NCBI RefSeq assembly: GCF_902459465.1
Contig: NC_047068.1
Location: 19,406,001-19,470,000, forward strand
DNA length: 64,000 nucleotides
Origin: Asterias rubens
Lineage: Eukaryota
Direction of reading: 5' to 3'
The notes under the pieces are model-generated. The model searched no databases and had not been told where the DNA came from. It saw nothing but the letters and a program-made list of their open reading frames with translations. Below, piece by piece: positions 20,251 to 41,552 of the stretch. A program made the translations under genes and the position numbers. Each line of letters starts with the position of its first letter. Position 1 is the first letter of the stretch.

Positions 20251-22076
20251 TTACGCTATTTGCCCTCCGCTTCTGCCCTTCTGCCCTCCTTGTTGTCCTG
20301 GTTGTTGCTTTTGTTGTGGTTTCTGTTGTTGTTGACCTTGCTGATGAACTTGCTGGACTTTTTGCTTCTGCCCTACACTACATTGTTGTCCTAATTGTTG
20401 CTGCAGCCTTTGCTGTTGTTTCTGTTGCTGTTGTTGTTGCTGACGTAGTTGCTGTTGTAGTTGCTGGACGTTATGCTTCTGCCCTTTGCGTTGATGTTCT
20501 AATTGATGATGAAGCTTTTCCAAATGTCTCTGTTGCTGTTCACGTTGCTGGTGCAGCTGCTGTTGTAGTTGCTGGCGCTTCTGCCCTTCGGGTTGCTGTT
20601 TTAATTGTTGACGAAGCTCATGCTGCTGTGTCTGTGTTGTTGACGATGCTGATGTAGCTGCTGTTGTAGTTCCTGGACGTTATGCTTCTGCTCTTCGCGT
20701 TGTCGTCCTAATTGGTGATGCAGCTTTTCCTGTTGTTTCTGTCGCTGTTGGGCTTGTTGATGTAGGTGATGTTGGAGTTGCTGGAGGTTACGCTTCTGCC
20801 CTTCGCGTTGTTGTCCTAGTTGTTGACGGAGCTCATGCTGCTGCGTCTGTTGTTGTTGTCGGTGCTGATGTAGCTGTTGTTGTAGTTGCTGGAGGTTACG
20901 CTTCTGCCCTTCGCGCTGTTGTCCTAATTGTTGACGGAGCTCATGCTGCTGCGTCTGTTGTTGTTGTCGGTGCTGATGTAGTTGCTGTTGTAGTTGCTGG
21001 AGGTTACGCTTCTGCCCTTCGCGCTGTTGTCCTAATTGTTGATGCAGCTGTTCCTGTTGTTTCTGTCGCTGTTGGCGTTGCTGCTGCAGCTGATGTTGTA
21101 GTTGCTGGAGGTTACGCTTTCGCTCTTCCTGTTGTTGTGCTAGTTGTTGATGAAGCTGATTCTGTTGCTGTTGACGTTGTTGACGTTGTTGACGTTGTTG
21201 ACGTTGTTGACGTAGCCTGTTACCTTGCTGCTGCTCATGTTGTTGTCCAAACTGTTGGTGCAGCACTTGCTGCTGGATGTGCCGCTCTTCTTGACGAAAA
21301 CGGTCAGGGAAGTATTCTTGCATTGTTTGGGCGAGTTCACCATGCCAACTCCCTTCCAATGGTAACTGCTGCTGTCCGAGTGCTGCTTGTCGAAGATGTT
21401 GCTGTCCTTCGTGCTCTTGTATGTTTGCTGGTTGCGCACAGTTAGCCGTTATCGGTGTATTGTCATTTCTTGAGTGCAGCCCATCAACCTGGTGAAAACG
21501 TTGCTGACCCAGCTCCACTTCATCTACATGTTCTTGTAACCATTCCTCTACACCTAGTTCCCCCGATTCTGCATTTTGTTTATTCTTCCCCGGTGGTTCC
21601 TCTGGTTGCTTCTGGTGATGCACATCATCAGGTTGTTGCTGTTCTGGTTCAGATTCTTGCAGATGTTGTTTCACAAGCTGCTCAGTCCATATCACGTCCA
21701 AACGTGTCTCCACCGCATGGAACTTCCCAACGATTTCTGCAAGCTGGAAGTTCCGCGGTAGACATTCGACAACCTCAGTACCGTTCAGGTGTACCTTTTT
21801 CCGGCATAGAGGGCACTCTAGCTCCCAATGGCTGCCATCAAGACCCTGTGGCCTGGTTTCCAACCCTGCAACACAATCCAGACAGAAGCTATGCTGACAT
21901 GGAAGAACAACTGGGTCTTGGTAGAAATCCAAACACAAAGGGCACTGCAGCTCATCTTTTAACTCTTTAAGCGACTCATCAAGTCGTTCGATTGCTGAAA
22001 ATTGTTCTGGTGGTGGTGGTGGTTTTGCTGCCGACATTTCACTCGTTTCAAAGTTATCTTTAAAAAAGGAGTTCAT
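20251..22076 (-). CDS. Single-exon C3HC4 RING-finger (TRIM-type RING) protein with a long Gln-rich repeat tail; a 1-nt frameshift near 20637 truncates it at 20601
   Basis: RING CPLCLDFYQDPVVLPCQHSFCLDC...CPLC at 21944-21804. ATG at 22076 or 22037 (the ORF-track start at 22088 is TTG). 36-aa (108-bp) repeats. Adding one A restores an open frame to the TAA at 20251. Confidence 0.78.
20300..21250 (-). repeat. Coding tandem repeat, 108-bp period, with CAA/CAG-rich filler
   Basis: CTGGAGGTTACGC recurs at 20781, 20889, 20997 and 21105 (spacing 108), with diverged units on both sides. Confidence 0.9.
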
Positions 22077-22308
22077 GTTATGTTCCAACCATCCATACTA
22101 TGTGCTCTGATACACTATAGGCTATTCATATATATCCTGTTATTAATACAGCACAGGATACAGTAGGGATGGGCAAGGCAGAATGACGTAGTCAACAAGT
22201 CAAAATAAAATATGTGCCAACTTAGCCTACAGTGTGACCAAGCAGTCCTGTTGTATCGAATTAACTCAACTTCCTGTCAACTCGGATTCAATAATCATAT
22301 TTCCTCGA

Positions 22309-22321: not shown

Positions 22322-22693
22322 TTGTGGGAAATAATTCTAGATTCAAACTGTACAGCAAGCTGTAACACATGAATTGCATATTTTGAAATAAATTTATATG
22401 CGTAGCAAGAAAGTCAAAAAATTATCAACATGACAACTAGTTCACATTCAATTCAGCGAAATTAAGTTTAAATAAAGGCACTCGGCACCTTATGGTAATT
22501 GTCAAAGACCAATATTCTCACTTGTTACCCAACGACACACGCATAAAATAGCAAATCTGTGAAAATTCTTTGCTTAACTTGTCTTCAAAGTTGCAAGAGA
22601 ATAAAGACAGGAAAAACACCATTGTTCCACAAGTGTTTGCTTTCAGATGCCTAACAAAAGGCTTCAAGCATGGAATCTTTTAATGTTCAAGTA

Positions 22694-25497
22694 CAGTCGA
22701 CTCCCGTTATAACGAGGTCCGCCGGACTGGCCCATTTTCCTCGTATTATCCGAATCTCGTCTTAACCGGAGCGCGCTAAATATAGATACATACGTCTTCA
22801 CTGTGCATGCACACAACACGTGTACATGTACATGTACGTGCATATACACTTGTGTTAGCCTGCGCGGAGCTGTTTGCTTATCAGAACAGCCATTACGAGC
22901 ATCTTGTACACAAGAATATCATTGCTAAATGTCTTATATTGAGTGATTAATCAGGGAAATGTAATATTTGGTACAATTTATGATAACAATATACCAAAGA
23001 GATGTCAACTTGCCGTCCAGAGCGAGTGGATTCTGCCCCGTAGCGCATGGTATGAACATGATGCATGCACTGAACGTTCATTTTCGTTGGTGATCGACAT
23101 GGAGTATCATGATAACAGCATGTCAAGCGTGGGACACCAGCGAGATGTTTCTGGAGTTAAGTTGCACATGGACTGAAGGAAGCTATTTGTGTACATGTAT
23201 CTGTGTCTTTTAAAATAATTTTATTTTTGATTATCAGTTACTTTGCCGTTTCCTTTTTTAATAATATTGTATTGTTTAATTTTTCAATTTCTCCTTTTAA
23301 TTCTTATTTCAGTATTTAATTCATTAAATATTTGTGTATCTGTGTCTTTTAAAATAATTTTATTTTTGATTATCTTTGCGTATCTGTGTCTTTTAAATCA
23401 TCTCTGTCTTTTCATTTGATTGAATTAATTATTCCGGAAGGGCAACCTTTGTTTTTCTCTCCTTTTAAAAATTAAATAATGGGGAAGGGCAACCTTTGTT
23501 TTCTCTTGGGGAAGGGCAACTTTTTTCTCTTTTTTTTTTTTTCTTTTTGGAAACGGGGAACCTTTATTCATTTAATCAGGACACGACATTGCATGAAATA
23601 AATCTCTTTTGTGTTGTGGTGGCTCTGAAAAGAGCCGGTTTGGTTAAATTTTTCTCCTCTACATCTGGAAGAAATCGGTGATCTTGCGCTGCGATTTGAC
23701 TTTATCCATCTTCTGTGCGAGGAAGGCACTCAGCACAGCCTGGGCAGCAAAGACTTCGCTGCTGGTGTCTTTCAGGCTGTACAGGAGGTCTTGCAGTTTG
23801 GGCATGGTGTCATGTGCCTCTCGAAGGGACATTGTTGGCTGTTGGTCACCATCATCTTCCTCCTCTATCTCCATCTCCTCTTCCTCTTCTTCTCCATTCA
23901 TCTCCACTGCTACTTGCTCCGCGATTTCAGCATCCGTCGGCTCATCCGTACACCGTACACCTGTGTCTGCGTTGAGATAATCGTTAAAAGAGACGGCGGG
24001 GAGATCGAGATGCCTGGCCATACGTTCCCAGATGTTGTCAGGTTGCGCCTCATCTTCACCCGTCTCCTCGTCTCCGTCTCCGTTCTCTCCATCGTCGTCA
24101 GTCTCTCCACCATCTTCGACAAACCCTGCTTTTGCAAAGCACTTCCCAATTGACACCGGTTTCACGTTTTTCCATGCTTCAAAAAGCATTTAAATTGCCT
24201 GCTTAACGTCAATAGGTTTGGGAGTTTCACCTGAGTCATAGCTGTGAAGGAGACTTTTCACTAAATGCTTCCGATAGTGAACTTTCATGTTCATGATGAC
24301 ACCTTGGTCCATGGGTTGAAGATGGGAAGTCGTGTTTGGAGGTAGGAATTGCAGAGTGATGGCCTGAAGGTTTTGAACTTTTGGATGAGCCGCGCAGTTG
24401 TCCACGAACAGAAGAACCTTGCGACTTTGGCGGGAAAACTTTCGATCCAAACGCCGGACCCATTCGGTGAAAAGATCTGAGACCATCCATGCCTTTCGGT
24501 TGGCCCGATATGTCACCGGAAGAGATTGAACATTCTTGAAGCAGCGTGGGTTCTTGAACTTCCCGATGACAAGTGGCTTGAGCTTCTCGGAACCATCCAT
24601 GTTGGAACACAGCATCACCGTCATCCGCTCCTTACTCTGCTTGCCACCATGACACTGTTCACCTTTAAATGACAAAGTCTTGTCTGGAGTGAGGCGGTAA
24701 AAAAGACCAGTCTCGTCAGCGTTGAAAATATCCTTGGCTTCGTAGCCACGGATGATGCCGGGAAGGGTTTCTTTCAGCCAGGTCGTGAGAGATGTCGGGT
24801 CAACACTGGCACTTTCCCCGCAGATCTGCTTGTGTAGAATGCCGTGCCGCTCTTTAAATCGGGAAAGCCAACCCGAGCTTGCTTGGAAGTTCCCGTGCCC
24901 CAACATCTCGGACAGCCGCTCTGCTTTTTCGCGAAGGAGAAGTCCGTTGACGGGAAGATTTTTGGCGCGCATCCCTTGAAACCACCGTAGGAGTGCCTCC
25001 TCAACATCTTCCAGCAAAGCAGTGCGGCATCTTTTTCTTGACGGTTGAAACTTCGACGACTCAAATCTTGACTTGATGTCATCTCGGTTCTTCAAAATGG
25101 TTGACAGTGTACTTGAGACGATGGCGTACTGGCGACCGACCTCTGCTTTCTTTGCCCCCGCATCCACAGCCCGGATGATCTCCATCTTGGTATCGAGGGT
25201 AAGACACTTACGCTTGGTTTTGATGCTAGCCATTTTCTTTTACGAATGTGGCAGTTACAGTTACGATGAACGTATGAGAGATGGTCCCAAAATGTACCCC
25301 TTTTTATAATCATTTGATGCGGTAAATTGTTTGAAGTGCAACTCACTCAGGAGGGGGTTTTAGAAAATCTTTTGTTTGGGCTATTTTTAATTGAAAAAGG
25401 GGCTCTACTAAAAAAAGAACTCGAACAGCGGTGACGTTTTTGAAGTTTTGCATGGATGATACGAGCAAGGATTAATCATTAGAACCCCTACATACTG
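22694..25497 (-). mobile_element. Tigger/pogo-family DNA transposon
   Basis: TA followed by TIR CAGTCGACTCCCGTTATAACGAGG at 22692-22717; contains the transposase; no clean matching TIR at the other end. Confidence 0.85.
23659..25233 (-). pseudogene. Tigger/pogo (CENP-B/TIGD4-like) transposase, 524 codons with one in-frame TAA at 24190-24192
   Basis: HTH-psq (RKCLTLDTKMEII), HTH-Tc5 (EEALLRWF..MRAKNLPVNGLLLREKA), DDE_1 triad (NADETGLF; FVDNCAAH; QPMDQGVI), acidic tail and C-terminal PIP-box QRKITDFF. The two track ORFs are in the same frame: ...QAI-TAA-ATG LFEAW. Confidence 0.92.
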
Positions 25498-27144
25498 CCG
25501 AGTGTAGTTATCTCTTTCTCAAAAACTATGTTACTTCAGAGGGAGCAGTTCCTCACAATGTTTTACACTACCAACAGCTCTCAAGTGCTTGTTAACAAGT
25601 AAGTTTTCATGCCAATACAAAAGTGTCCAGTGCCTTTAAAATAATGTACTTGGGAACCAAATTCCTGAGGAAAACTGTTGAACAATGCAACATAGTTAGT
25701 TTGTCTATTTGACAACAATTGCAACACTATTGTGACACAGAGACAAGCATGTCTTACTTTTTTTGGCAATTCATTTATTTCATAAATGATACAATATTCC
25801 AATCGGCATTATAATTCTTTCTCGATTAAAATAACTGAATGATTAATTGAGTTTCTATAATCTGTTCAATTTGGCAGTGGATAATTGTAATCGATGTTAA
25901 TTTAATTAGATAAAGGGACCTGTATATATTATGCATATGATCTCATTGAGTAGGGTCCGGTCAGCTACAGGTGACAGACGGTTGATTATTGGTCATCCTG
26001 CGGGCTGCATGTAGATGTGCGGTTTTCATTGTTTCATCAATGTTTAACCTCTAATATAGTGGCGTTATTATGACGTCAATATAGTCCTTTGTCAAGTTTT
26101 GCTTTTGTTGCTCTTAAGAGTTGTTTTTAGTACATTTTCTTCCAATAAAATAAAAAATCAGGTGCATTGGCAAAGTAATTTGAGAACCTTTAAAAGGTTA
26201 ACAAAAAAATAACAAGCTCTTCTCTAACACCACTACTTACAAAAGAGATGTTTACACGGTGTCACCGCAAACCTTACTTAATATAATATGCATTAAGCTA
26301 TGGCTAGGTATAATAAAACAACTTTTGAAGTTGTACTAACTATTATAAGGCCCAATGTCAGACAGAAAACAGTAATTGCTTAACTTGATTTAAAATCAAA
26401 AGGCAGCCTATATACATTTACATATGAATTTTTTTGTAAAAAACACAATTTCAGTACTCAATCAAACTACAAAAATAAGAAGATAACATACTTTTGAGTT
26501 ACAATATTAAAGAGTAGAGTTTCAATTCCACAAGAATCAGTAAAAAATATTTTGTAATTCTCAGGATTTCAATAGACCACATTTCTGCTAGTTTTTTCTT
26601 TAATAATTGAAAGACACTGGACACATTTGGTAATTATCAAAGACCAATTTTGCTCACTTGGTGTATCCCAACATCCAAACTAACAAACCTGTAAAAGTTT
26701 GGGCTCAATTGGTCAGCGAAGCTGCACAAAAATAATGAAAGAAAAAACGCCTTTGTTGCACAAATTTTCTATGCTTTCAGATGCATAATAAAATGCTTCA
26801 AGCCTGAAGTCTATTATTATTAAGAAATCACCACTTTCTCAAAAACTACTTTACTTCAGAGGGAGTCAGTTCTCTCAATGTTGTATCAACAGCTTTCCAT
26901 TGCTCGCTACCAAGTAAGAATTATGCTAACAATTATTTTGAGTAATTACAAATAGTGTTCAGTGCCTTTAAGCCCATTACATCACCTCGCACTACCATGT
27001 CAATGAGATGACACAACTTCATGTTATCAAACTGTTAAACATCTGGACGCTTTTTTTGATCATCCATTAAGCCTATGAGCAGTAAATTACTATTACCAAC
27101 CAAATATTAAAATGTGTTTGCTATTCCTTAAATGGAATATCAAG

Positions 27145-28171: not shown

Positions 28172-31100
28172 TTAAGCACAGCCAAGAACATTTGAGATTA
28201 CCACATCACCAGCAATAACGAACGTCTCAATGGTGGACAGATTAGGGATACGATGCTTGTAGGAGATGAAGTACTGGTTATCCACACGAACCTATGGAAT
28301 GGGATTATAGTTCAAAATTAATACTAGGTGACACACTACGATAAGAACTGTTCACACTACTCTATTCCCCGGAGGCAACCACCGGGAATAACAGCCAGCC
28401 TTTTCACACTTAGGGATCACTTACCCCCTGATCTACCCCGACAAATGAGCAACCATGAACCTCTGAGAATTAGCCTTTTTTTTTTTTAGATATGGTGGAA
28501 CCCCATGGAATAGGTCATTAGGCGGGGACAGTGTGAAAATGCGCTGGTTAACTGTGGGGTAAAAAACTCCTGGGGCCTCCCCAGGGTTGAGAGGCTTTCT
28601 CTGAATCGAGCCACTTCCGCTGCGGCTATAGCCAATGGCTGCAAGGACAACGGAAAGAATAGGACCTTTTGGTGTTACAGCCATAGCCACTGCTGAAGCC
28701 ATCAATTCCAACAAGGTCCAACATAGGAAAAGCCTGGGTAAGGATGTGACTGCCAAACATTCAGGACATAGCTTATGAATTAAACTTGGCCAAAACACAG
28801 TGGGAGACAGCTTTAGTTGTGATTGGTTTCCAGGCATGGAATTTTCAACTTTGAAAGGGCAAGGCCATTTTCATTTTTCAAAGGGCACATATTAAAGTCA
28901 ATGAGCAACTTTAGAAGGGGCACTATGGCCAAGCCAAGACCAGGGGCAACGGACGAGGTCGTGACCTCCGTGTAATATTCCAGTCCTGGGTTTTAGTTCA
29001 ACTGATTTGTCGACCTTCAGGGCTCCAACTAACCACTGGACCACTGGCAAGAGTTCAGTGAATGGAGCATTGGTACCGAGCTGTTGAATTTGATACTCAT
29101 CTTCAAGCAAGTACAACTCGGCCTCCCTAGGTCAGGGAAGTACTTGATATGAATATAAAACCCCTTACAAAAATTCTGCCTTTTCATTGGTTTAGAGCGC
29201 GTCACATGATGACATGTCTTAGTTTTACTAGAAACCTGGCGGCCGTGTGATAGTAGTTTGCCATGTAATAATCAACTATTCCATGGCACGCGCAGTTCCC
29301 AGACATCTTTCTTACCCACCTCAAACCCAATCGGTTTTGCATCTGTGTATCTGAAATGTGCGTACGAGGGTTACGTGTGCGATGATGATAAATAGTCTGT
29401 TGGGGTGCTATAAAACAAATATTGACTGCTTTTACTCGTGCTAATGGTTAAAACTATGGTTAATATTTGTATACTAGACAGTCGGGGCCCAATATCTTAA
29501 AGACTGTAAGCACAAAAACTTGCAAAGCACAGAATAGTACTGCTTAGGAGAAACAGGTAATACCAGCCAACATTCCATTAAAGTTTACATTGTTGAGGCT
29601 GGTGTCCCACTCATTTTGTGCCGAGCAAAAAAAGTTGGTCAAGCAGTGTTTTCTGCTAAACAGCTTCATAAAACTGGGCCCAGGTTGCAAAACATTTTCA
29701 CACCACTGAATACATCACAATTTAAAGGCACTGGACACGCTTGGTTGTCGTCAAAGACCAGTATTCTCACTTGGTGTATCCCAACTGATGCATAAAAAAA
29801 CAAACCTGTGAAAGTTTTGGTTAATTTTGGTCAACGAAGTTGCAAGAGATAAATGAAAGAAAAAACACCTTCATTACACAAACTTGTGTGCTTTCCCAGG
29901 ATGCATAATAATAGACTTCAACTAAAGTTTGTTATTATTTGATTGAGAAGTTACCCCTTTCTCAAAAACTACATTTGTACGTTACTTCAGAGGGAGCCCT
30001 TTCTCACAATTTTCTATACTATCAACAGCTCTCCACTGCTCGTTACCAAGTAAGTTTTTTATGCTAACAATCGGTTTGAGTAATAACTAATAGTGTCCAG
30101 TGCCTTTTACAAAAGTGAAAAATATTTGTAAAGTATACCTCGAACTTGTCCAGCAAACAAATAAATTCCAGCTTGAAAGGACGTCCAACCTTGAATGGAA
30201 ACTGTGGTCCGCCCCTTTCCTCTGAACCATACCGCCCCTTCATTCTGGAGTTACGAACCACCATAACAGGCCGAGTGAGTCGAGGGTTAAAATGCAGAGC
30301 AATGTCTCCTGTTTTACTGTTCTTATCAAGCTGAAAGTTGATGTGGAACCTGGAATATAAATGAAAAGTGAATCCCGGGTAATTGAAAAGATTGGATTTT
30401 TTAAATTCTGCTTTTAAAAACCAATATATTTGCAAAGCAAAAAATGAGTGGGGGACTAGTCACAACAATGCAAACTTAATGAAATGTTGGCTGTTAACCC
30501 TTTTTTGCTAAGTAAGATTTTCCTGTGCTTAGCAAGTTTTTGCGCTTACAGGCTTTATGAAAATTGGCCCAGAGCTTAACTTAATGGTTCTGCTTACTGT
30601 AAGTAAAGAATCAGCACTTACGGAACAGGAAATACCACACTTACGTCAAGTGTATTTACAGGTTGGCAGGTAATTTTTGCTAGTGTACTCCTTGTCACTA
30701 TGCATTCTTTGCTTACACAGAAATGAAGCTCTTGCCCCCCAATTGGGGATTGTAAGAATATAACTCTCCAGTTAGCAGAGCCATGGTACTGGGCACAGAT
30801 TTCTAGATATTTGCGATTTGAAATGCAAAAATCTTCAGTGTTATTGTTAAATTACTTCTCTAAAATTGTTGTGTAAAATCAAATGCACCCCATGTGACAG
30901 TGTTTCTGGCAACCAGAATACATAACAAGCAAGAGGTGTGTTATAATTTTACACTTGTGATCAACATTCATCTTCAACTTTCCAATGGCCCACGCACGAA
31001 TACTCGCTATGGTGATAGAGCATTCTCAGTAGCTGCACCAACTTGCTGGAACAAGCTCCATCTTCACATCCATGACTCATCCTCGATCAGGTCATTCAAG

Positions 31101-33870
31101 ACTTAGGTAAAAACACATCTCTTCAGACAAGTGCTTTGAAATGCCTGTGGAAGCTATACAAATTTTATTGAGATACTGTCATAGACTTTGAAACACTGTT
31201 TAACCTTCATACCGTTTACAATTCTTGGCTGGTTGTCCAAAAACAGTGATTTGCTTCCCAGGTCCCATGGCAGTGATTCCACAGAAGTAGGGAATTTTCT
31301 ACAAAAAACAAAATAAAAATAATCATAGAATCAGGAAATAAACAAAAAATATCGAGGAAACATCATAAAATATTGAGGGGAAAAAATCATAAAATATCAA
31401 GGAAACATAAAAACGAAAGGATGTACAATTTGTCTAGCAAAGAAAGTAGTTTTGGAGTATTCTTTTAATTCTTGTTAAAGTTTCAAGCAAATTTGGAAAC
31501 CCTTTTACCAAATCCAAAATCAACGCTTGGAGGGTTTTTAATGTATAAATTCCATCCTTCTTAGGAAAAATGACCCTGTCTGGTCACCCACAGTCTCTCA
31601 GGGCACAAGACATACATTAGTGCCCCCACTTATGATTATCAGCCAGTCCATAATGTAGGGTGTCATTGCCGAGTGGTTAAGAGCATCAAATTCAGGTTCT
31701 GGTGGTTTAGTCATCAGAGTGTGGGTATACTTTAAATATCACAGCAGCCCAAGGGCTGTATACTGCCCAGGGAGCTGAGAAAGATTAAAGGAATGTTATT
31801 GGCCCAACGACCAGGGCACTTATGGACTGATATTAATTTAATTATAATAATGAAGACACTTACATAAGTTTGTTTAGTGACTCCCATCACAGCAAGTTCA
31901 CCAGCAACGTTCAATGATGCCTGTAAAGGGATCAAAAGCAAAAAAATAATTGTGTATTATTTAAAGAGTAGATAGGGTATTGTGTGACAAAAGCATTCAT
32001 ACATTTGACTTAAATGTTTCATCATGCAACATTTTGCCTTAGAAATTTTACGTCAAAATAAAAAAACACAAGTTTCTAACGCAAAACGACATAAATTATG
32101 GAAACTCCTTTTGGAGCAACGAGAGTAGGTGTAAGCATTTTTAGTCTTCAATACTCATCACAATTGAAAAGATGGTTTATCAGATTTTGTAGTAAGATAA
32201 TGATGCACTTTATTTATTCAGTTGAAAAACACAAGACCACTGGGCTTGTCTGGTCGCGAGGTTACTGGCCCACACTAAATTCGGTCTAGTTTAGCTTTGA
32301 GCCCTTAGTTAGTTGCAGTGTCTACAGTATACCAAAACTCATGCTACGTAGAAACACTCACCATGGCTGTGTTTAGAGTGACTGTCGGGTCTTGCTTAAT
32401 TGGAGTTGGTGGGACAGAAGAACCATGGGTTGGAAACGATGGACAAGTATCTCCACTTTCTGACGGTGAAATACATGCTGTGAGCTCGGTGACTTTGTGG
32501 CCCGCATAGAGGCCCCTTGTTGGATTATGGAGATCTTGCAAACACTGCCAGCAGAAGAAACGAAGGCAATCCGCACAATGTGATGAAGCAGGGAAGTGGC
32601 ATGCGCTACAGCCTGTTTCTTTAGTAGACAGCGATAAAGATGGTTGTGGGGAAGGGGTTGTGGTTTTCTCTTTGTGAGGGTACGGGTATGGGTAGCTGCG
32701 ATAACCATAGCTCTGGCTATCATCGCTGCTAGGGTACGGGTAACTTCCAGATGTGGGCATCAGTGGATAAGGAAGACTTTGTGAATGTTGAAGACTCGGT
32801 GGATATTGGTAAGGTTGTGGTTCGACATACGAGGGCAAGCTACTCGTACTTTGCTTTACACTTTGGTGCTCTGCCTCTGATGGTGGTTGCAGTTCATTCC
32901 ATCTGTCAGCTTGCTGTCGACGCCAATCTGGCTCCTGTGGTTGCTGAGGTTGGTTCCTTCTTGCCTCAAGCGCACTGCCCTCTTGCTCAAGACTTTGTGA
33001 ATGTTGAAGAATTGGTGGATATTGGTAAGGTTGTTGCTGAGCGTACGATGGCAAGCTAGTTGTACTACTTTGCTTTACATTTTGGTGCTCTGCCTCCGAT
33101 TGTGGTTGCAGTTCATTCCATCTGTCAGCTTGCTGTCGACGCCACTCTTGCTCCTGCAGTTGCTGAGGTCTATTCCTCCTTGCCTCAAGTACATCCTCTT
33201 GCTCGAGCTTTAGCTGCAGTCTGTTCTGTTCTTGCTGCAGCAGATGGAGACGTCGCTGTTGCTGCTGCTGCGGTGTTGAAGAACAATCTTCTTGCTGAAA
33301 GGGTGCACTAGGAGCTGTATCCTGTTCACGTACCCCTGGGTTAACTCCGGAGTGTGTTTGACTTTGAGAGAAGAAAACGTTGTCTGACAGGGGCTGTGGT
33401 GCAGCATTGAACACATCCCTTTCTCCACGTCCCAGTCCCACCATCTGTTCATTTTCTTGTTCTTGAATTTGATGTACTTTATCAATTTGTTTCACCAAAT
33501 CTTGAGTAATTGATTCTTCTACTGATTCCCTCAATGATCTTACAGTTTGTGCATGCTCTCTTTCCGCTGCTTGGAAGGTTTCAACAATCGCCTGTCGCTC
33601 GAAGTTCTTGGGAATGTTGTCGACCCCATCTCGGGAGCTCAGCTGCATTATTTTCCTGCATAGCGGGCATTCAAGTGCATGGCAAACACCAACTGCCCTG
33701 GTTCTCACCCGTTTAATGCAGTCACGACAGAAGTTATGCTGACATGTCAAAGCCACAGGATCTTTGTAGAAGTCCAAGCATAATGGACAATGAAGTGTTT
33801 CTGCCACTTTTTCGAGGCCTGTTGTGGAGGGACCACCACTAGCCGGTGGAGTTGTTGCACTCGCAGACAT
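28172..33870 (-). CDS. TRIM-like RING - Q/P/Y-rich linker - B-box1 - galectin CRD fusion protein (about 660 aa)
   Basis: Exons 33870-32362 (1509 nt; RING 33789-33658, B-box1 32610-32497), 31920-31864 (57 nt), 31298-31213 (86 nt, KIPY..GPGKQITVFG), 30349-30139 (211 nt, FHINF..DIALHFNPR..VVRNS..YGSEER..FPF) and 28291-28172 (120 nt, VRVDNQYFISYKHR..GDVVISNV stop). All junctions are GT-AG and all phases match (0,0,2,0). Confidence 0.82.
30960..31140 (+). mobile_element. L2-clade LINE 3' fragment in intron 3 of the fusion gene
   Basis: Translates to TNTRYGDRAFSVAAPTCWNKL..SSIRSFKT..KTHLF, the typical end of an L2 ORF2. Confidence 0.75.
31657..31830 (+). mobile_element. tRNA-derived SINE (second family), internally deleted
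   Basis: GTGTCATTGCCGAGTGGTTAAGAGCA head; a related copy lies on the minus strand at about 62160-62360. Confidence 0.5.
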
Positions 33871-35486: not shown

Positions 35487-36315
35487 GTTGGTTTTATTAC
35501 CAGGCGAGATTCACTGGAGTTCCATTTGTTATTTGTAGCTACCAGTTTCCATTGTCGAGTTCCCACAGTGCATGCAGGATAGAGACAGATTTAAAGGTAC
35601 GTGTGTTGGGGGGGGGGGGGGTGGGGGGGGGGGTAGGCCTCACATAGGAGAAGTGTATAGAACAACTGAAACAGCGATCATATAGGTGTGATGTCTTCGT
35701 TGGTTGGTATGGTGCTTTGTAGATTTTCCGTCATCTTTTATAAAGGCACTGCGACTGATCTGTGATAAATGCAGGAATAAACCAAAAGGACCTTCTATAT
35801 AAATGCACACAAAAAGTTAATGGCCTGACGTTTCGACCCTACCGGAGTCTTTCTCGAAACGACAACAATGCAACAGGTAGCTTAGTGTATGAGCAGTGAA
35901 GTGGAAAAACTTGAATAGAGAAAGAGAGTCAGGAAGCTCTGTGGAACCATTCTACCTAGTACCCTTATTAAACACACACACAAGCGGAGGGTTTTGCGTA
36001 AGCAGAGCATGCATTAGCCCAGGCTATAGTAGTTGTTATGTTAATACGCCCTTTATATCATGACAGTATAGATTTCGGCTCAGTAGTACTACAATAGCAA
36101 GAAGGATACCTTGAGAACCTGGAATATCTTCAACAAGACATGGATGATAAGTGAGTAAGTACAAGCATTGAGGAAGATGGTACAAGTAGTAATGCCTGTT
36201 TTTTTGGTTTTTTTTACAGAAATCGGGGAAAGTGCTTAGTATACAGTGTTAACCCACATCGGTCTACTATTAGTATTAGGGTAAAACCAAATGAATTTTG
36301 TTCGATTGAACCTTG

Positions 36316-36640
36316 GGATCTTTTCATCTTCCAAAAACCTATAAATTCAGTGTAGAGCAAGACAGCGTCTAAAGAACAAAATTTACCTGGCATGTTACTG
36401 CAAAACCAAATAATTAGGTTGATACCTATATAGTATACCTCACTCCCACATGCAATGCCTCAAATCCCATAACTATAGGATCTTTTCGTCTTCCAAAAAC
36501 CTATAAATTCAGTGTAGAGCAAGACAGCGTCTAAAGAACAAAATTTTCCTGGCAGGTTACTGCAAAACCAAATAATTAGGTTGATAACATATTATAGTAT
36601 ACCTCACTCCCACATGCAATGCCTCAAATCCCATAACATA
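36316..36640. repeat. Two-copy tandem duplication, 162-bp period
   Basis: GGATCTTTTC(A/G)TCTTCCAAAAACCTATAAATTCAG starts at 36316 and 36478; the copies are nearly identical. Confidence 0.9.
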
Positions 36641-37008
36641 ATGCTACTTGAAAAAAAGTATTAGTGTTTATTGGTGTGTTTTTTTGGATATGCATAACGG
36701 TATCTATAGGTGTTCAGACACGCTGCACACGTTCATTTCCTCCTGCGAAAAATTCACATTGTGTCGAGTTCATAAGGCCAGGGCCTTGCGCACTCGGGTC
36801 ACTTAGATCATGCTACACTGCCAGACGGATTATGTTTATTTTATTTCATTGACGGACGACCTTGATACAAAGGCCCGTGTTTTTCTTCGATGAATCAAAC
36901 TAACAAATTTCATTATCAAGTGAGACGGTATTATTGTTGCTTTCTGAAGTATATCAGACTTTTACAAATCACTTTCACAATCCAAGTACAATAGTAATAG
37001 CTCTCAAT

Positions 37009-37353
37009 TTAAAGCCATTGGACCCTTTCGGTAAACAGTGTTGTCCAAGGCCCACACTTTGTGTACCACAACTTCTATATCAAATAACAAACCTGTGAAA
37101 ATTTAGGCTCAATCGGTCATCGGAGTCGGGAGAAAACAACGGAAAAACCCACCCCACCACATGTGTTTAAAATAAATCCGCTATTCTCGTTAACGAGAAT
37201 TTATATTGTTTTGCTGTTTTCTCAAAAAGTGAAGCATTTCATGGAATAATATTTCAAGAGAAGTCTTTCACCATTGCCTTCTGTAAACCCTGTAAGTTAT
37301 TTGTAAATCTGTGAATTTTTGTTTTCTGAACCAAAAGGGTCCAATGGCTTTAA
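37009..37353. mobile_element. Kolobok-type MITE, second subfamily, sharing its right TTAA with the adjacent major-family copy
   Basis: TTAA-AGCCATTGGACCCTTT ... AAAGGGTCCAATGGCT-TTAA-AGGCACTGGACAC. Confidence 0.8.
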
Positions 37354-38806
37354 AGGCACTGGACACTATTGGTAATTACTCAAAATAATTATTAGCATCA
37401 AACCTTTCTTGGTAAAGAGTATTGGGGAGAGGTTGAAAGTATAAAACATTGTGAGAATCGGCTCCCTCTGAAGTGACGTAGTTTTCGAGAAAGAGGTAAT
37501 TTTCAACGAATTTGATTTCGAGACCTCAAGTTTAGAATTTGAGGTCTCGAAATCAACCATATAAAAGCACAGAACTTCGTGCGACAAGGGTATTTGTTTA
37601 CTTCATTCTTATCTCGCAACTTCGACGACCATTTGAGCTCAAACTTTCACAGGTTTGTTCTTTTATGCATATGTTGAGATACACCAAGTGAAAAGACTGG
37701 TCTTTGACAATTATTACCAATAGTGTCCACTGTCTTTAAAGGGATGTGTCACAGTCCAGATTGTGTACCATATTATTTCCAACGCCGCACTATCAAGAAA
37801 GATATATTTTTATACGTGCAAAAGTTCTAATAGCCATAACAACCAATAAACTACCAGCAGCAATATAGTTGTGTCTTGATTTAATGCGGTTGTAAGGATT
37901 TCATATGGTGCCAAGGAAAGGAACACAGGGGAAAAAAAGTGTATTTTGCTTTTAAACACTTACACGTATTAGCCTATACGTATATAGATTTTACAAATTG
38001 TTCTTTGGGGCATTTTAGGGTAAACGGAATTATTGGTTTAAAGACAGTGGACACTATTGGTAATTGTCAAAGACCAGTCTTCTCACTTGGTGTATCTCAA
38101 CATATGCATAAAATAACAAACCTGTGAAAATTTGAGCTCGATTGGTCGTCAGAGTTGTGAGATAATAATGAAAGAAAAAAACACCCTTGTCACACGAGTT
38201 GTGTGCTTTCAGATGCTTGATTTTGAGACCTCAAATTCTAAACTTGAGGTCTCGAAACCAAATTCGTTGAAAATTACTTTTTTTCTCGGAAACTACGTCA
38301 CTTCAGAGGTAGCCGTTTCTCACAATGTTTTATATTATCAACCTCTCCCCATTACTCGTTACCAAGTAAGGTTTTATGCTGATAATTATTTTGAGTAATT
38401 ACCAATAGTGTCCACTGCCTTTAAGAATAAGAATAATTTCAGTCCAATAGTTTCAAATGATCAATGTGTGAAACCTTTGTCAAATAAAATTTTCCTTTTT
38501 GGTATATTGAAAACGATGAAACGGATTTCATTTTATCTTATCATGAATTTTATGCGAATACCTGCTTGTTTCGATTGCATCAGACGAAATAAACAATGTA
38601 TTGGGATTCTAATTTCGTTTTGGACTATAACCGTGTGAATTCGTATAATTTGACATTATTTAATTTTAACATCAGGCAGAAATTTTGCTCCATGAAGGTT
38701 GATACAAGGAACTTTATTGTAGTCAGTTAGTTTTCAGATTTAAACTGTTGAGAATTTCAAAAACTTATTTGCACATTATTACCCAAGTCACGTAGGTCAA
38801 CTCCAT

Positions 38807-38950
38807 ATAGGGTGCGTTCGTTTAGCTTCCGGTGTAAGGCGGGTTTTTCTTCTAGGACGAACGTGGGTAATTATCTGCACACATTCGTCCTGAAAAAAGA
38901 AAACGCCACACACCGGGGTCGACCCAGGGAAGCTAAACGAACGCACTTAT
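38807..38950. mobile_element. MITE upstream of the desaturase gene
   Basis: GTGCGTTCGTTTAGCTTCC pairs with GGAAGCTAAACGAACGCAC. Confidence 0.65.
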
Positions 38951-39181
38951 AGACTAGCCCCAATGCAGGGGGGGGGGGGGCAGATAAAGGCAGCTGCTTT
39001 AAAATGGCAGGGTTAGGCATATAGTTCGAACCCCATCCGAGATGCACTTGGAAAATATCAAACAAATTAATCAAAATACTACTGCTCTGAATGTAGAAAC
39101 TAAGTATTTAACAAAACTATATTTGTTACCACTACAGACCCATGAAAACAAAAGGAACTAAGATGTCCTGTAGTGACCAAA

Positions 39182-41552
39182 ATGAAGACTGACATAGATG
39201 GAGGATGTCCCCTACTTGACGTCAAGCCGCAAGCTATCATTGTGTGGCGTAATGTGGTTCTTATGGCAACACTGCATGGAGCAGCAATATATGCATTACT
39301 GTGTCTCACATGGAAGTGCTACTTATATACTTTACTTTGGGGTAGGTTTAGTCAGCATGATAATAATATTCAGTAAATTGGCGAAACTATAGGCAAATAA
39401 TGAATAAATGTGGCTTCTTATATAGCGCTCATTATCCGTCACTCATTGACAGTCATGGCGCTTACATTTTCAGTATTTCCCTGCAAGGGATGTGGGACTA
39501 CGTTTCAAATATCAGACATACTCTTCGTGCATAACACCATTTAATGGTTTACAAGGTGATGTGGCGCAATATGCTGCCAATCAAACCAGGAACACCGGGG
39601 CGGACCCTTTTTTCGATAAGTGCACTGTATTAATGTACGTGCGTTACACAACACACGGGACCCAACGGCTTTACGTCCCATCCACAAGTGCATGCCTCGC
39701 TTCAAGGACACAGGTGTCACGACTTAGACTCGGAAACACCAGAGCTTGAGTCCGGTGCATGCTCTTAACCGCTTTAGGCCACACTGCCACACCACACAAA
39801 TTATATTCATAATAACATTTGAGTGCATGATTTATTAATTGATCCTAAATATGACATTTCGTCACTGTTACAGCAAGTCTACTCTACTGGGTTGGTGCCC
39901 TCGGGATAACAGCTGGAGCACATCGCTTATGGGCACACAGATCTTACAAAGCAAAGCTCCCTCTACGGTTACTTCTAGCCATGTTTGACTGCATAGCATT
40001 TCAAGTAAGTCTTGACCGAGGACATGCTAACGATTCTTGACTGAGGAGAAGAAACTCTAAAAAAGATTTAGATACAATGCCATTATGAACAAACAAACAA
40101 ACAAACAAACAAACAAACACCCCAGTGAGCAGATGTGATTAAACAAACACTTTAAAGTTACTGCTATCGAAGATTTTATTGAATAGGAAAGAAACAATAT
40201 ACATGTACGTGGATTTAAATTATTCAACTATTAATTCTGAAGATTGTCCCTTTAATGTTACCCTTTTCTCAATCTAGTAAAAGCAGATTCAGTTCTCTGT
40301 TATTACCAAAAGAGTGTCCCTTTAATGAATTCCTTTTCTAAGTTAGGTCATACTTTCAGTCTTCATATGATTGCCAATGCCAATGACAATACAGAAACTA
40401 TGCACCTTTGTTTTCAAATACTAATTTTTCAGTTTTGATTGTTATGTGTGTAGATGGACATTTATTTCTGGGTGCGTGAACATCGTGTACATCACAGATT
40501 CTCAGAGACCAATGCTGATCCACACAATGCTAAGAGAGGGTTCTTCTTTTCCCATGTGGGTTGGCTTCTGTGCCGTAAACATCCGGATGTCATCGAGAAG
40601 GGGTCAAAGGTTGATCTGAGTGACCTCATAGCTGACCCTGTCATCCGGTATCAGAGAAAGTCAGTACAGATAACCATTCAAAATATCATCATTAAAGGGA
40701 TATAGGGACTATTCTTCTTGCGTGATATTCGCTCCGGGTTTTCGGCGATATCTAAAAATCAAAATCTTTTGAAATTAAATGTTCACACGTTAGCTTTTTT
40801 GTATACATGTACATCTATATCGAAGTTTTAAAAATCAAACGGCTTAAAAAAAAACAAAGGTATTGGCACCAAAAGAATACAAACATAATTCACATGTAAT
40901 ATGTATCTGCTTTAGTTATAGACATCAGTTTCCTATAACTATTCTCATTCCGCACGTCTGTTGCACAACCTCGATTTGGTCGAATATTCGTCGTTGTTTC
41001 TATATTTATTGCAACTGGTTTATGCCCCCCAAGAGATTCACATAATATTGTCAATTCGATACTTTCTTTACGCGGAGTAGTGAAAGTTTAACTCCATTCA
41101 TATTTCAATCAGAGTTAATCGTTGTGTTCATAATTTCCTCCAGGTACTTTCTACCCTTGATGCTATTCTTCTGCTTCATCATGCCAACTACCATCCCCAC
41201 CCTATGGGGAGAATCACTCTGGAACGCCTACTTCATCGCAGCAATACTACGCTACTGTCTCCTGATGAACAGTACGTGGTTAGTGAACAGCGCGGCCCAC
41301 CTCTGGGGTAGCAAGCCGTACGATCGCTCCATCAACCCCGTCGAGAATGCCCTCGTGTCTACCCTCACAGGGGGAGAGGGATGGCACAACTACCACCATG
41401 CATTCCCGTGGGATTACAGGGCTGGAGAGTTCGGATGGAGAATCAACCCCACCACTATGTTCATTGATTTGATGGCTGTTTTGGGCCAGGTGACAGATAG
41501 AAAAACCACTTCAAGAGAATCCGTAAAGTCCAGGAAGTTGAGAACCGGATAA
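39182..41552 (+). CDS. SCD: Delta-9 acyl-CoA (stearoyl-CoA) desaturase, about 301 aa
   Basis: Exons 39182-39341, 39874-40004, 40454-40659 and 41144-41552 with matching phases (1,0,2). IVWRNV motif and three His boxes (HRLWAH, HRVHH, HNYHH). The start codon is uncertain. Confidence 0.95.
39400..39790 (-). mobile_element. DeuSINE-like element (Deu core, LINE-like tail)
   Basis: In the 57490-57800 copy the minus-strand core reads GTCCTTCGGAGGGGACGTAAAGCCGTTGGTCCC...TATCGAAAAGAGAAGGGGTTCGCCCTGGTGTTCCTGG, which resembles the Deu domain. Related copies at 56430-56700 and 57490-57800. Confidence 0.6.

What the first reader, a model, noticed from the sequence alone, without database searches (positions are those of the whole stretch)
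28172..33870. RING/B-box E3-ligase module fused to a galectin carbohydrate-recognition domain
Seen: the long RING ORF has a consensus donor (GCCATG|GTGAGT at 32362) just before its read-through stop. Four downstream exons splice in frame (phases 0,0,2,0) and encode a linker plus a complete ~138-aa galectin CRD (IPY..GPGKQITVFG; RFHINF; DIALHFNPR; VVRNS; GRYGSEER; FPF; KHR; GDV). There is no signal peptide. Established: cytosolic galectins sense luminal or pathogen glycans exposed by damaged endolysosomes. In mammals they recruit separate E3s/TRIMs (e.g. galectin-3 with TRIM16) to ubiquitinate and clear them. TRIM C-termini are usually PRY/SPRY, NHL, FN3, PHD-bromo, MATH or ARF, not galectin. 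Inference: this is a single-chain glycan-directed ubiquitin ligase for innate immunity or lysophagy/xenophagy. I do not recognise this architecture as described, but I could not search for it.
Basis: partly seen in the sequence, partly recalled or inferred. Interest (0 to 1): 0.92.

Follow-up and report, generated by a model that had tools for sequence, protein, structure and literature searches.

The report
RING ubiquitin ligase fused to galectin
Sea stars carry a real, conserved gene that joins a TRIM-type RING ubiquitin-ligase module to a sugar-binding galectin domain in one protein, a design that mammals build from separate proteins; databases hold it only as an "uncharacterized protein" and its function is untested.

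Summary
On the minus strand, five GT-AG exons (33870-32362, 31920-31864, 31298-31213, 30349-30139, 28291-28172) give a 660-aa ORF. It has a TRIM-type C3HC4 RING, a Q/P-rich helical and repeat region, a B-box-1-like zinc finger that scores below Pfam's threshold, a linker and a complete galectin CRD.

NCBI models use the same junctions and architecture in Asterias amurensis (XP_071797209.1), Patiria miniata (XP_038064706.1) and Acanthaster planci (XP_022092563.1). Exon phases match in A. amurensis and Patiria. So the fusion predates the split of two sea-star orders.

The CRD folds as a galectin (AF2 pLDDT 95, TM about 0.9). It keeps 7 of 8 canonical sugar-contact residues; the stacking Trp is Tyr in all three genera. 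Long-term CRD dN/dS is 0.12.

In an exhaustive search, no other representative among the top 150 CRD relatives carries a RING. I found no paper describing the architecture.

The proposed function, a cytosolic glycan-directed E3 for membrane-damage or pathogen sensing, is plausible but inferred. The protein is not a canonical TRIM. Sugar-recognising E3s (SCF-FBXO2/27) already exist as a concept.

Verdict: a new variant of a known kind, of moderate to high interest.

The parts
32362..33870 (-). Exon 1 (1509 nt, 503 codons). It runs from the start ATG at 33870 to the donor GT at 32361-32360, and encodes the RING, the Q/P-rich region and the B-box-like finger.
   Evidence: It matches the first 581 aa of A. 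amurensis P0001 at 93-96% identity.
33658..33789 (-). C3HC4 RING finger (aa 28-71), TRIM type. All 8 zinc ligands and the Arg after the last Cys are invariant in three genera.
   Evidence: Pfam zf-C3HC4 E 7.7e-9 and zf-C3HC4_4 E 6.7e-9. Invariant columns C28 C31 C43 H45 C48 C51 C68 C71 R72. The nearest solved RINGs are TRIM30, TRIM5, TRIM69 and TRIM21, with the alignment running into the flanking helices.
32773..33189 (-). 219-bp tandem repeat (1.9 copies, about 73 aa per unit) within the Q/P/S-rich middle region. A. amurensis has three copies.
   Evidence: TRF. P0001 is 734 aa against 660 aa here, and the difference is one extra unit.
32482..32622 (-). B-box-type-1-like zinc finger (aa 417-463; spacing C-x2-C-x7-C-x2-C-x4-C-x2-C-x4-H-x9-H).
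   Evidence: Pfam zf-B_box E 3.9e-4, 20.9 bits, below the gathering score of 24.1 but covering profile positions 2-42 of 42. All Cys are invariant in orthologues. There is a weak profile match to B-box 1 of a TRIM-NHL protein. No B-box was found in the PDB profile search.
32344..32361 (-). Intron-1 donor GTGAGT and the in-frame read-through stop (VSVST*). An AATAAA lies at 32218 in intron 1, so a short RING-only isoform is possible.
   Evidence: Whether this site is used is untested.
31864..31920 (-). Exon 2 (57 nt, phase 0 to 0), a linker. It contains an internal Met 10 codons before the CRD.
   Evidence: It is 100% identical to P0001 577-595. The Patiria equivalent is 69 nt with a strong acceptor.
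31213..31298 (-). Exon 3 (86 nt, ends in phase 2), the first strands of the galectin CRD (KIPYFCGI...GPGKQITVFGQPAKNCK).
   Evidence: It has the same 86-nt length in A. amurensis and Patiria. Skipping it gives A. planci isoform X2.
30139..30349 (-). Exon 4 (211 nt), the sugar-binding core of the CRD (RFHINF, DIALHFNPR, VVRNS, YGSEER, FPF).
   Evidence: Pfam PF00337 E 2.6e-17, profile 29-96.
28172..28291 (-). Exon 5 (120 nt including the TAA stop), the last strands of the CRD.
   Evidence: Pfam PF00337 E 3.7e-5, profile 97-130. It is 120 nt in all three species mapped.
20601..22088 (-). Tandem paralogue downstream on the same strand: a 495-aa ORF with a related RING (39-48% identity) and Q-rich 36-aa repeats, but no galectin. 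It is context for the origin of the RING module and not part of the fusion gene.
   Evidence: A related RING gene follows the fusion gene in A. amurensis (L002 22590-24236) and A. planci (L004 18874-19890).

Best explanation
Shown: this is one protein-coding gene of a sea star (Asterias). Its 660-aa product has, in order, a TRIM-type C3HC4 RING with flanking helices, a Q/P-rich and partly helical repeat region, a B-box-1-like zinc finger, a linker of about 60 aa, and a complete galectin carbohydrate-recognition domain. It has no signal peptide and no membrane segment. The fusion is ancestral to at least Forcipulatida plus Valvatida.

Inferred: the RING recruits an E2~ubiquitin. The zinc ligands, the E2-contact Leu/Pro positions and the 'linchpin' Arg after the last Cys are all conserved. 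The helical region and zinc finger probably mediate self-association, as in TRIMs. The galectin domain supplies targeting. Beta-galactoside glycans are normally absent from the cytosol. The CRD would therefore engage only when luminal glycans are exposed by ruptured endosomes, lysosomes or phagosomes, or when glycans sit on invading microbes. This would bring the RING to that site to ubiquitinate local proteins and mark them for autophagy or signalling. In effect this is the mammalian galectin-plus-TRIM partnership, or the FBXO27-type sugar-sensing ligase, built as one chain.

My odds: the fusion gene is real, about 0.9. It is an active E3, about 0.65. The targeting is glycan-directed damage or pathogen sensing, about 0.4.
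For: Gene model: five exons are in frame with consensus splice sites.
- The junctions are identical to the NCBI model of A. amurensis.
- Patiria miniata has the same 5-exon layout, with exon lengths x/69/86/214/120, phases 0, 0, 2, 0, and strong acceptors before exon 2.
- A. planci has two NCBI isoforms, both joining the RING exon to the galectin exons. X1 is in frame and X2 skips exon 3.
- The RING paralogue sits downstream in both Asterias species and in Acanthaster, which supports orthology.

Domains:
- Pfam RING and Gal-bind_lectin score well above threshold.
- The RING is closest to TRIM30, TRIM5, TRIM69 and TRIM21, including the post-RING helix.
- The AF2 model of the CRD has pLDDT 95.3. 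It superposes on galectin-5, -8, -9 and -4 CRDs at TM 0.87-0.94 and rmsd 0.9-1.8 Å.
- By sequence it is closest to the galectin-8 C-CRD (E 1.7e-22 for that domain).
- H, N, R (HFNPR), V, N (VVRNS) and E, R (SEER) are all conserved in three genera.

Constraint: CRD dN/dS between the window and Patiria is 0.12.

Cytosolic location: there is no signal peptide or TM segment.

Mechanistic precedent: galectin-3 enters perforated lysosomes and binds TRIM16, and FBXO27 is recruited by luminal glycans (PMC6776906). Fbxo2 clears damaged lysosomes (PMC7605537).
Against: - I saw no transcript, expression, binding or ubiquitination data. The splice evidence is gene models plus conservation.
- The galactose-stacking Trp is replaced by Tyr in every orthologue. 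Among 566 aligned CRDs the column is W in 511 and Y in 14. Lactose-type binding may therefore be weakened or altered.
- The B-box is below Pfam's threshold, and the profile search of the PDB returned IBR, HIT and C2H2 fingers rather than B-boxes.
- The order of modules is not RBCC.
- Some RING-bearing TRIMs are pseudoligases (PMC11992055, title and abstract only).
- The full-length AF2 model is uninformative (pLDDT 36).
- Between the two Asterias species the CRD has 12.5 nonsynonymous and 2.5 synonymous differences, so dN/dS is 1.46. That is not significantly above 1 and is compatible with either recent relaxation or diversifying selection.
Confidence: 0.55

Rival explanations
1. The galectin domain is a protein-protein interaction or otherwise non-lectin module. 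The protein would then be a RING E3, or a scaffold, for a protein substrate and not a glycan sensor. Precedents for non-glycan use of galectin folds are the galectin-8 C-CRD binding NDP52, and lectin-dead galectin-related proteins such as GRIFIN and GRP.
For: The stacking Trp is Tyr in all three genera, which is a rare state (14 of 566 CRDs). The closest solved domain by sequence is the galectin-8 C-CRD, which is known to bind NDP52 through a non-glycan surface (PDB 4gxl is listed).
Against: Seven of eight canonical sugar-contact residues are strictly conserved over the Asterias-Patiria-Acanthaster divergence, with CRD dN/dS 0.12. Lectin-dead galectin relatives usually lose several of these residues. 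Tyr is still aromatic and could stack. My recollection, not checked here, is that a W68Y mutant of human galectin-1 retains some binding.
Confidence: 0.22
2. The locus mainly yields separate products, and the fusion mRNA is minor or an annotation artefact. One product would be a RING/B-box protein ending at the read-through stop (VSVST*), polyadenylated after the AATAAA at 32218. The other would be a stand-alone prototype galectin started at the Met in exon 2.
For: The stop lies 5 codons after the donor and there is an AATAAA in intron 1. An in-frame Met sits about 10 codons before the CRD in exon 2. A. planci isoform X2 shows that CRD-less products are made or at least predicted. I could see no RNA evidence directly.
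Against: Exon 2 has a strong polypyrimidine-AG acceptor in both Asterias and Patiria, which a first exon would not need. The reading frame and phases across the joint are preserved in lineages whose synonymous sites are saturated. Three independent NCBI annotations join the parts. Both A. planci isoforms contain the RING exon spliced to galectin exons. The position of the exon-2 Met is not conserved between Asterias and Patiria.
Confidence: 0.1
3. It is a glycan-binding E3 with a housekeeping rather than a defence role. One example is quality control of mislocalised or retrotranslocated glycoproteins, as with FBXO2/FBXO6 in ERAD. Another is turnover of a specific galactosylated partner.
For: Sugar-recognising SCF ligases have such roles (established knowledge; FBXO family cited in PMC7605537). 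There is a single-copy gene per genome in the loci seen here, unlike many expanded immune families.
Against: ERAD substrates carry high-mannose glycans, not the beta-galactosides that galectins prefer (established knowledge). The CRD's amino-acid replacement rate between the two Asterias species is about 3 times that of the rest of the protein (p about 0.001-0.006). Most changes lie in loops next to the binding strands, a pattern more typical of recognition molecules under changing pressure.
Confidence: 0.1

Closest known systems
Mammalian galectin-TRIM partnerships (galectin-3 with TRIM16; 'TRIMs and galectins globally cooperate', Chauhan et al. 2016, as cited in PMC6776906)
   Same: A cytosolic galectin CRD is coupled with a TRIM-type protein. 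The presumed logic is the same: glycan exposure on damaged endomembranes leads to local ubiquitination and autophagy.
   Different: In mammals these are two separate polypeptides that bind non-covalently, and TRIM16 lacks a canonical RING. Here one chain carries a canonical C3HC4 RING and the CRD. It has only been seen in sea stars, and its function is untested.
Sugar-recognising SCF ligases (Fbs family: FBXO2, FBXO6, FBXO27)
   Same: An E3 whose substrate receptor is a lectin-like domain. FBXO27 and FBXO2 are recruited by luminal glycans of damaged lysosomes (PMC6776906, PMC7605537).
   Different: They use an F-box plus FBA domain in a multi-subunit cullin ligase and mainly bind N-glycan cores. 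Here a monomeric-type RING is fused to a galectin fold. Pfam detected no F-box or FBA domain.
Canonical TRIM/RBCC ligases with a C-terminal recognition domain (e.g. TRIM5alpha, TRIM21 with PRY-SPRY)
   Same: The RING sequence class and flanking helices match. There is a zinc finger of the B-box kind, helical segments and a C-terminal beta-sandwich recognition domain.
   Different: The order is RING, helices/repeats, B-box-like finger, CRD, rather than RING, B-box, coiled coil. The B-box is below Pfam's threshold. The C-terminal domain is a galectin, which is not among the TRIM C-terminal classes I know of or found in the literature searched.
Tandem-repeat galectins 8, 9 and 4 (and galectin-5)
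   Same: They have the closest CRDs by sequence (galectin-8 C-CRD domain E 1.7e-22) and by fold (TM 0.87-0.94). The HxNPR, VxN and ExR motifs are kept.
   Different: This protein has a single CRD, Trp replaced by Tyr, and an N-terminal 520-aa ligase-type extension instead of a second CRD.

Membership tests
Galectin (Gal-bind_lectin, PF00337) | Sequence match to the family profile above the curated threshold over the whole CRD | tested here: met
   Exon 4 scores 63 bits and exon 5 scores 23.6 bits against a cutoff of 22.1. Orthologue P0001 scores 114.6 bits over profile 9-130 of 132.
Galectin (Gal-bind_lectin, PF00337) | Beta-sandwich galectin fold | tested here: met
   The AF2 model of the A. 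amurensis CRD (about 90% identical to the window's) has pLDDT 95.3. Its best PDB matches are all galectin CRDs, at TM 0.87-0.94.
Galectin (Gal-bind_lectin, PF00337) | Canonical sugar-contact set H-N-R, V-N, W, E-R | tested here: inconclusive
   Seven of eight are present and conserved. The Trp is Tyr in Asterias, Patiria and Acanthaster, a state seen in 14 of 566 aligned CRDs.
Galectin (Gal-bind_lectin, PF00337) | Beta-galactoside binding activity | not testable with these tools
   This needs recombinant protein tested on lactose resin or a glycan array.
Galectin (Gal-bind_lectin, PF00337) | No classical signal peptide (cytosolic synthesis) | tested here: met
   Hydropathy only: the first 30 N-terminal aa have mean KD -0.04, and there is no TM-grade segment.
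TRIM / RBCC E3 ligases | N-terminal RING of the TRIM class | tested here: met
   Pfam zf-C3HC4_4 and zf-C3HC4. The top PDB matches are TRIM30, TRIM5, TRIM69 and TRIM21, including the post-RING helix.
TRIM / RBCC E3 ligases | B-box zinc finger(s) directly after the RING | tested here: inconclusive
   The zf-B_box match is 20.9 bits, below the gathering score of 24.1. All zinc ligands are conserved. The PDB profile search gave no B-box, and there is only a weak match to a TRIM-NHL B-box 1. In Asterias the finger lies about 345 aa after the RING. Patiria and Acanthaster have an additional B-box-like finger nearer the RING.
TRIM / RBCC E3 ligases | Coiled coil following the B-box (RING, B-box, CC order) | tested here: not met
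   After the B-box-like finger come only a linker of about 60 aa and the CRD. Long helices are predicted at aa 92-146 and 200-253 of P0001, that is before the finger, and only at pLDDT 55-80.
TRIM / RBCC E3 ligases | E2-dependent ubiquitin ligase activity | not testable with these tools
   Only sequence features are available: 8 zinc ligands and the Arg after the last Cys are invariant.
Fbs sugar-recognising F-box proteins (FBXO2/6/27) | F-box plus FBA (F-box associated) sugar-binding domain | tested here: not met
   Pfam scans of the window exons and of P0001 and P0009 found no F-box or FBA match. The resemblance is functional only.

The most novel reading that the evidence does not exclude
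This is a natural 'Rosetta-stone' fusion. It would show that TRIM-type ligases and galectins form an ancient functional unit, and that sea stars use a single-chain, glycan-sensing RING E3 to ubiquitinate ruptured endolysosomes or cytosol-exposed microbes directly. The Trp-to-Tyr binding site and fast-changing loops would be tuned to particular (possibly microbial) glycans.
Probability: 0.4. Interest if true: 0.75.

Novelty: new variant of a known kind. Interest (0 to 1): 0.55.

Why it matters
In mammals, sensing of endomembrane damage relies on cytosolic galectins that then recruit separate ubiquitin and autophagy machinery. Which E3s act, and how directly they are coupled to glycan recognition, is still debated (PMC6776906).

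A conserved natural fusion of a TRIM-class RING with a galectin CRD is independent evolutionary evidence that the two activities belong together. It also offers a minimal one-protein system for testing glycan-triggered ubiquitination in vitro and in cells.

It extends the known range of recognition domains attached to TRIM-like RINGs, and it adds a candidate cell-autonomous immune effector to echinoderm immunity. If the CRD proves inactive as a lectin, it would instead be a useful case of a galectin fold recruited for another kind of recognition.

Tried and rejected
1. P0002 (580 aa, 100% identical, ending VSVST) first looked like evidence for a read-through transcript. It is a prokaryote-style ORF call on a 3.76-kb genomic contig of an ENA metagenome assembly that is collinear with the window, intron included. 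It says nothing about splicing.
2. The word-index search with the whole RING exon was swamped by the Q-rich region: only 8000 candidates were scored and 4 hits returned. Searches restricted to a region worked better.
3. The exhaustive HMMER search with the CRD lists the top 150 by summed score, so multi-CRD proteins dominate. I screened all 150 for a RING with a regex and phmmer, and only the sea-star cluster has one. RING-galectins whose CRD scores under about 110 bits would not be seen.
4. The ESM Atlas look-up found no cluster of 50 or more members that combines RING and galectin.
5. The B-box profile against the PDB returned no B-box, only IBR, HIT and C2H2 fingers at E of 1e-3 or weaker.
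6. Full-length AF2 with a 4-sequence alignment gave pLDDT 36 and is unusable beyond hinting at long helices.
7. An exact scan of JGI metagenome contigs for the exon1-exon2 junction 26-mer found nothing, as expected.
8. Literature searches for the architecture, the accession numbers and W68Y found nothing relevant.
9. Late-domain-like motifs in the linker (LPSY x2, YPPxL x2, PSAP) exist in Asterias but there is no PPxY. None is conserved in position in Patiria or Acanthaster, so I did not build on them.
10. Positive selection on the CRD is not demonstrable. dN/dS is 1.46 from 15 differences, and the test against neutrality gives p = 1.

Full report
**What is in the sequence**

The window is eukaryotic DNA with about 38% G+C. 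It is 92-97% identical at the nucleotide level to Asterias amurensis chromosome CP134962.1, so it comes from a congeneric sea star.

On the minus strand an ATG at 33870 opens a 1509-nt exon. This exon ends at 32362 in ...GCCATG|GTGAGT. Read through, it would stop five codons later, at TAG 32346-32344.

Four further exons follow: 31920-31864, 31298-31213, 30349-30139 and 28291-28172. Each is preceded by a pyrimidine tract plus AG, and each internal one is followed by GT. They join in frame with phases 0, 0, 2, 0 to give a 1983-nt CDS of 660 codons.

**Domains**

- Pfam places a C3HC4 RING at aa 28-71 (E about 7e-9).
- A zf-B_box match at aa 417-463 covers the whole 42-position profile but scores 20.9 bits, under the gathering score of 24.1.
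- Gal-bind_lectin matches exon 4 (E 2.6e-17, profile 29-96) and exon 5 (E 3.7e-5, profile 97-130).
- Between the RING and the zinc finger lies a Q/P/S-rich region containing a 219-bp tandem repeat (1.9 copies).
- Simple hydropathy shows no N-terminal hydrophobic core and no membrane-grade segment.

**Is it one gene?**

I could not see RNA data, so the case rests on independent gene models and conservation.

(a) The NCBI protein XP_071797209.1 of A. amurensis (P0001, 734 aa) carries RING plus PF00337. It has exactly the junction peptide predicted here. Its exons are 1728/57/86/214/120 nt. The extra length is a third copy of the repeat.

(b) Patiria miniata XP_038064706.1 (P0009, 619 aa) has the same architecture.
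- On its genome locus I reproduced the model exactly. It has five exons, with the last four of 69/86/214/120 nt and phases 0, 0, 2, 0.
- There is a strong acceptor in front of exon 2.
- An in-frame TGA lies just upstream of the ATG, so the N-terminus is complete despite the 'partial' label.

(c) Acanthaster planci LOC110980302 has two NCBI isoforms.
- X1 (P0160, 631 aa) is RING, two B-box-like fingers and a galectin.
- X2 (P0158, 552 aa) lacks the 29 residues of exon 3.
- X2 therefore reads the galectin core exon out of frame, giving ISHQLDVQQ... where X1 has FHINLMCNK.
- Both isoforms join the RING exon to galectin exons.

(d) The fusion gene is followed by a related RING-only gene on the same strand in the window (20601-22088), in A. 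amurensis and in A. planci. This supports orthology.

A first exon would not need the conserved acceptor before exon 2, and the frame across the joint is kept although synonymous sites between Asterias and Patiria are saturated. I put the reality of the fusion at about 0.9.

A short RING-only isoform is possible (AATAAA at 32218), as is a stand-alone galectin started at the Met in exon 2. These would be additional products and remain untested.

**The RING module**

All eight zinc ligands and the Arg immediately after the last Cys are invariant across the three genera.

The nearest solved structures are TRIM RINGs: TRIM30 (5.8e-12), TRIM5alpha (2.6e-11), TRIM69 and TRIM21. For TRIM5alpha the alignment extends through the post-RING helix, matching PRNFHLAGIIEKF to PNRHVANIVEKL. 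That helix forms the RING-dimer bundle in TRIMs (established knowledge).

The zinc finger before the CRD has B-box-1 spacing and invariant cysteines. Beyond the sub-threshold Pfam hit, it is supported only by a weak profile match to B-box 1 of a TRIM-NHL protein. A profile search of the PDB returned IBR, HIT and C2H2 fingers instead.

Patiria and Acanthaster have a second such finger closer to the RING. Asterias has lost it or replaced it with repeats.

The module order does not satisfy the RBCC definition, so I call the protein TRIM-like and not a TRIM.

**The galectin module**

An AF2 model of the A. amurensis CRD, about 90% identical to the window's, is confident (pLDDT 95.3, pTM 0.89). It superposes on galectin-5, -8, -9, -4, -3 and -7 CRDs at TM 0.87-0.94. 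By sequence the best solved match is the C-terminal CRD of galectin-8 (domain E 1.7e-22).

Of the eight canonical sugar-contact residues, seven are present and invariant: H, N, R of HFNPR; V, N of VVRNS; and E, R of SEER. The stacking Trp is Tyr in Asterias, Patiria and Acanthaster.

The site therefore looks maintained but atypical, and its ligand preference cannot be read from sequence.

**Selection**

- Between the window and Patiria, CRD dN/dS is 0.12 with saturated dS, which means long-term purifying selection.
- Between the two Asterias species, the CRD shows 12.5 nonsynonymous and 2.5 synonymous differences (dN/dS 1.46). This is not distinguishable from 1.
- However, the CRD's replacement rate is about 3 times that of the rest of the protein (p about 0.001-0.006).
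- Most replacements lie in the loops adjoining the HFNPR, VVRNS and YGSEER strands (the topology assignment is my inference).
- This fits either recent relaxation or diversification of the binding face. The data are too few to decide.

**Distribution and prior knowledge**

- A word-index search with the CRD among proteins of 404-1284 aa found RING plus galectin only in the sea-star proteins.
- An exhaustive HMMER search of 1.84 billion representatives gave 1644 galectin-like hits. Among the 150 best (110 bits or more), only the sea-star cluster contains a RING.
- The ESM Atlas has no large cluster with this combination.
- Full-text searches for the domain pair, for TRIM/RING plus galectin-domain architectures, for sea-star galectin E3s and for the accession numbers found no description.

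So the architecture sits in public databases only as automatic 'uncharacterized' models. These searches cannot exclude distant or independent RING-galectin fusions elsewhere.

**How it most likely works (inference)**

The protein is synthesised in the cytosol. A TRIM-class RING with intact E2-binding hallmarks suggests ubiquitin-ligase activity. The helical Q-rich segments and zinc finger(s) plausibly drive self-association, which activates TRIM RINGs.

Galectin ligands are normally confined to the extracellular or luminal face of membranes. Cytosolic galectins therefore act as sensors of ruptured endosomes, lysosomes and phagosomes. In mammals they then recruit TRIM16 and autophagy receptors, and the lectin-type F-box protein FBXO27 is recruited by luminal glycans to ubiquitinate damaged lysosomes (PMC6776906). 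FBXO2 does likewise in brain (PMC7605537).

The sea-star protein would merge sensor and ligase in one chain. I give this reading about 0.4.

The main rival, at about 0.22, is a non-lectin use of the galectin fold. Other rivals are mainly separate transcripts (about 0.1) and a housekeeping glycoprotein-turnover role (about 0.1).

**Verdict**

The finding is a new variant of a known kind, a TRIM-like RING E3 with an unprecedented galectin recognition domain. So far it has been found only in sea stars. It is of moderate to high interest as a natural fusion that mirrors the mammalian galectin-TRIM axis.

Noticed in passing
window 20601-22088 (-): A tandem paralogue: a 495-aa single-exon ORF with a related TRIM-type RING (39-48% identity to the fusion gene's) followed by Q-rich 36-aa repeats (108 bp x 7.6). 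It has no galectin. A related RING gene follows the fusion gene in A. amurensis (L002 22590-24236) and A. planci (L004 18874-19890).
   Followed up: partly
window 23659-25233 (-), within about 22693-25504: A pogo/Tigger-type transposase (CENP-B_N + HTH_Tnp_Tc5 + DDE_1, E 4e-42) lies between the two RING genes, and its ORF is broken by a stop at about 24190. The roughly 2.8-kb segment holding it has no counterpart at this place in A. amurensis, so it looks like a lineage-specific insertion.
   Followed up: partly
window 23596-23641 (-): Rfam histone 3' UTR stem-loop (38.2 bits, gathering score 34) sits just downstream of the transposase ORF, with no histone ORF beside it. The A. amurensis annotation has an odd locus-spanning 136-aa histone model here.
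   Followed up: no
window 32773-33189 (-) and L002 about 10660-11320: The 219-bp coding repeat in exon 1 differs in copy number between species: about 2 units here and 3 in A. amurensis (660 aa against 734 aa).
   Followed up: partly
P0158 / P0160 (Acanthaster planci LOC110980302; L004 10001-15303): Isoform X2 skips the 29-codon exon 3, so the galectin core exon is read out of frame. This predicts a CRD-less RING/B-box product or an NMD target.
   Followed up: partly
P0009 aa about 197-240 and P0160 aa about 203-253: Patiria and Acanthaster carry an extra B-box-like finger (ANCHR-like_BBOX, E 0.002) between the RING and the Q-rich region. It is absent from both Asterias proteins.
   Followed up: partly
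window 32770-33312 (-) (aa about 187-360): Late-domain-like motifs (PSAP, LPSY x2, YPPxL x2; no PPxY) occur in the Asterias linker. They are not conserved in position in Patiria or Acanthaster.
   Followed up: yes
window 1789-2175, 37350-37740, 38037-38425, 47946-48201, 61268-61655: A dispersed repeat of about 390 bp (83-91% identical copies, both orientations) is also present in introns of the A. amurensis locus. It is probably a SINE or MITE.
   Followed up: no
window about 36060-41550 and about 44100-44330 (by homology to L002 2826-7884 and 1-209): Going by the A. amurensis annotation, the upstream neighbours are a fatty-acid desaturase gene and TMEM101. In Patiria and Acanthaster the upstream neighbour is instead a 647-aa TPR protein, so upstream synteny differs between the orders.
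   Followed up: no
L003 16080-18495: In Patiria a C-type lectin gene (PF00059) lies directly downstream of the RING-galectin gene.
   Followed up: no
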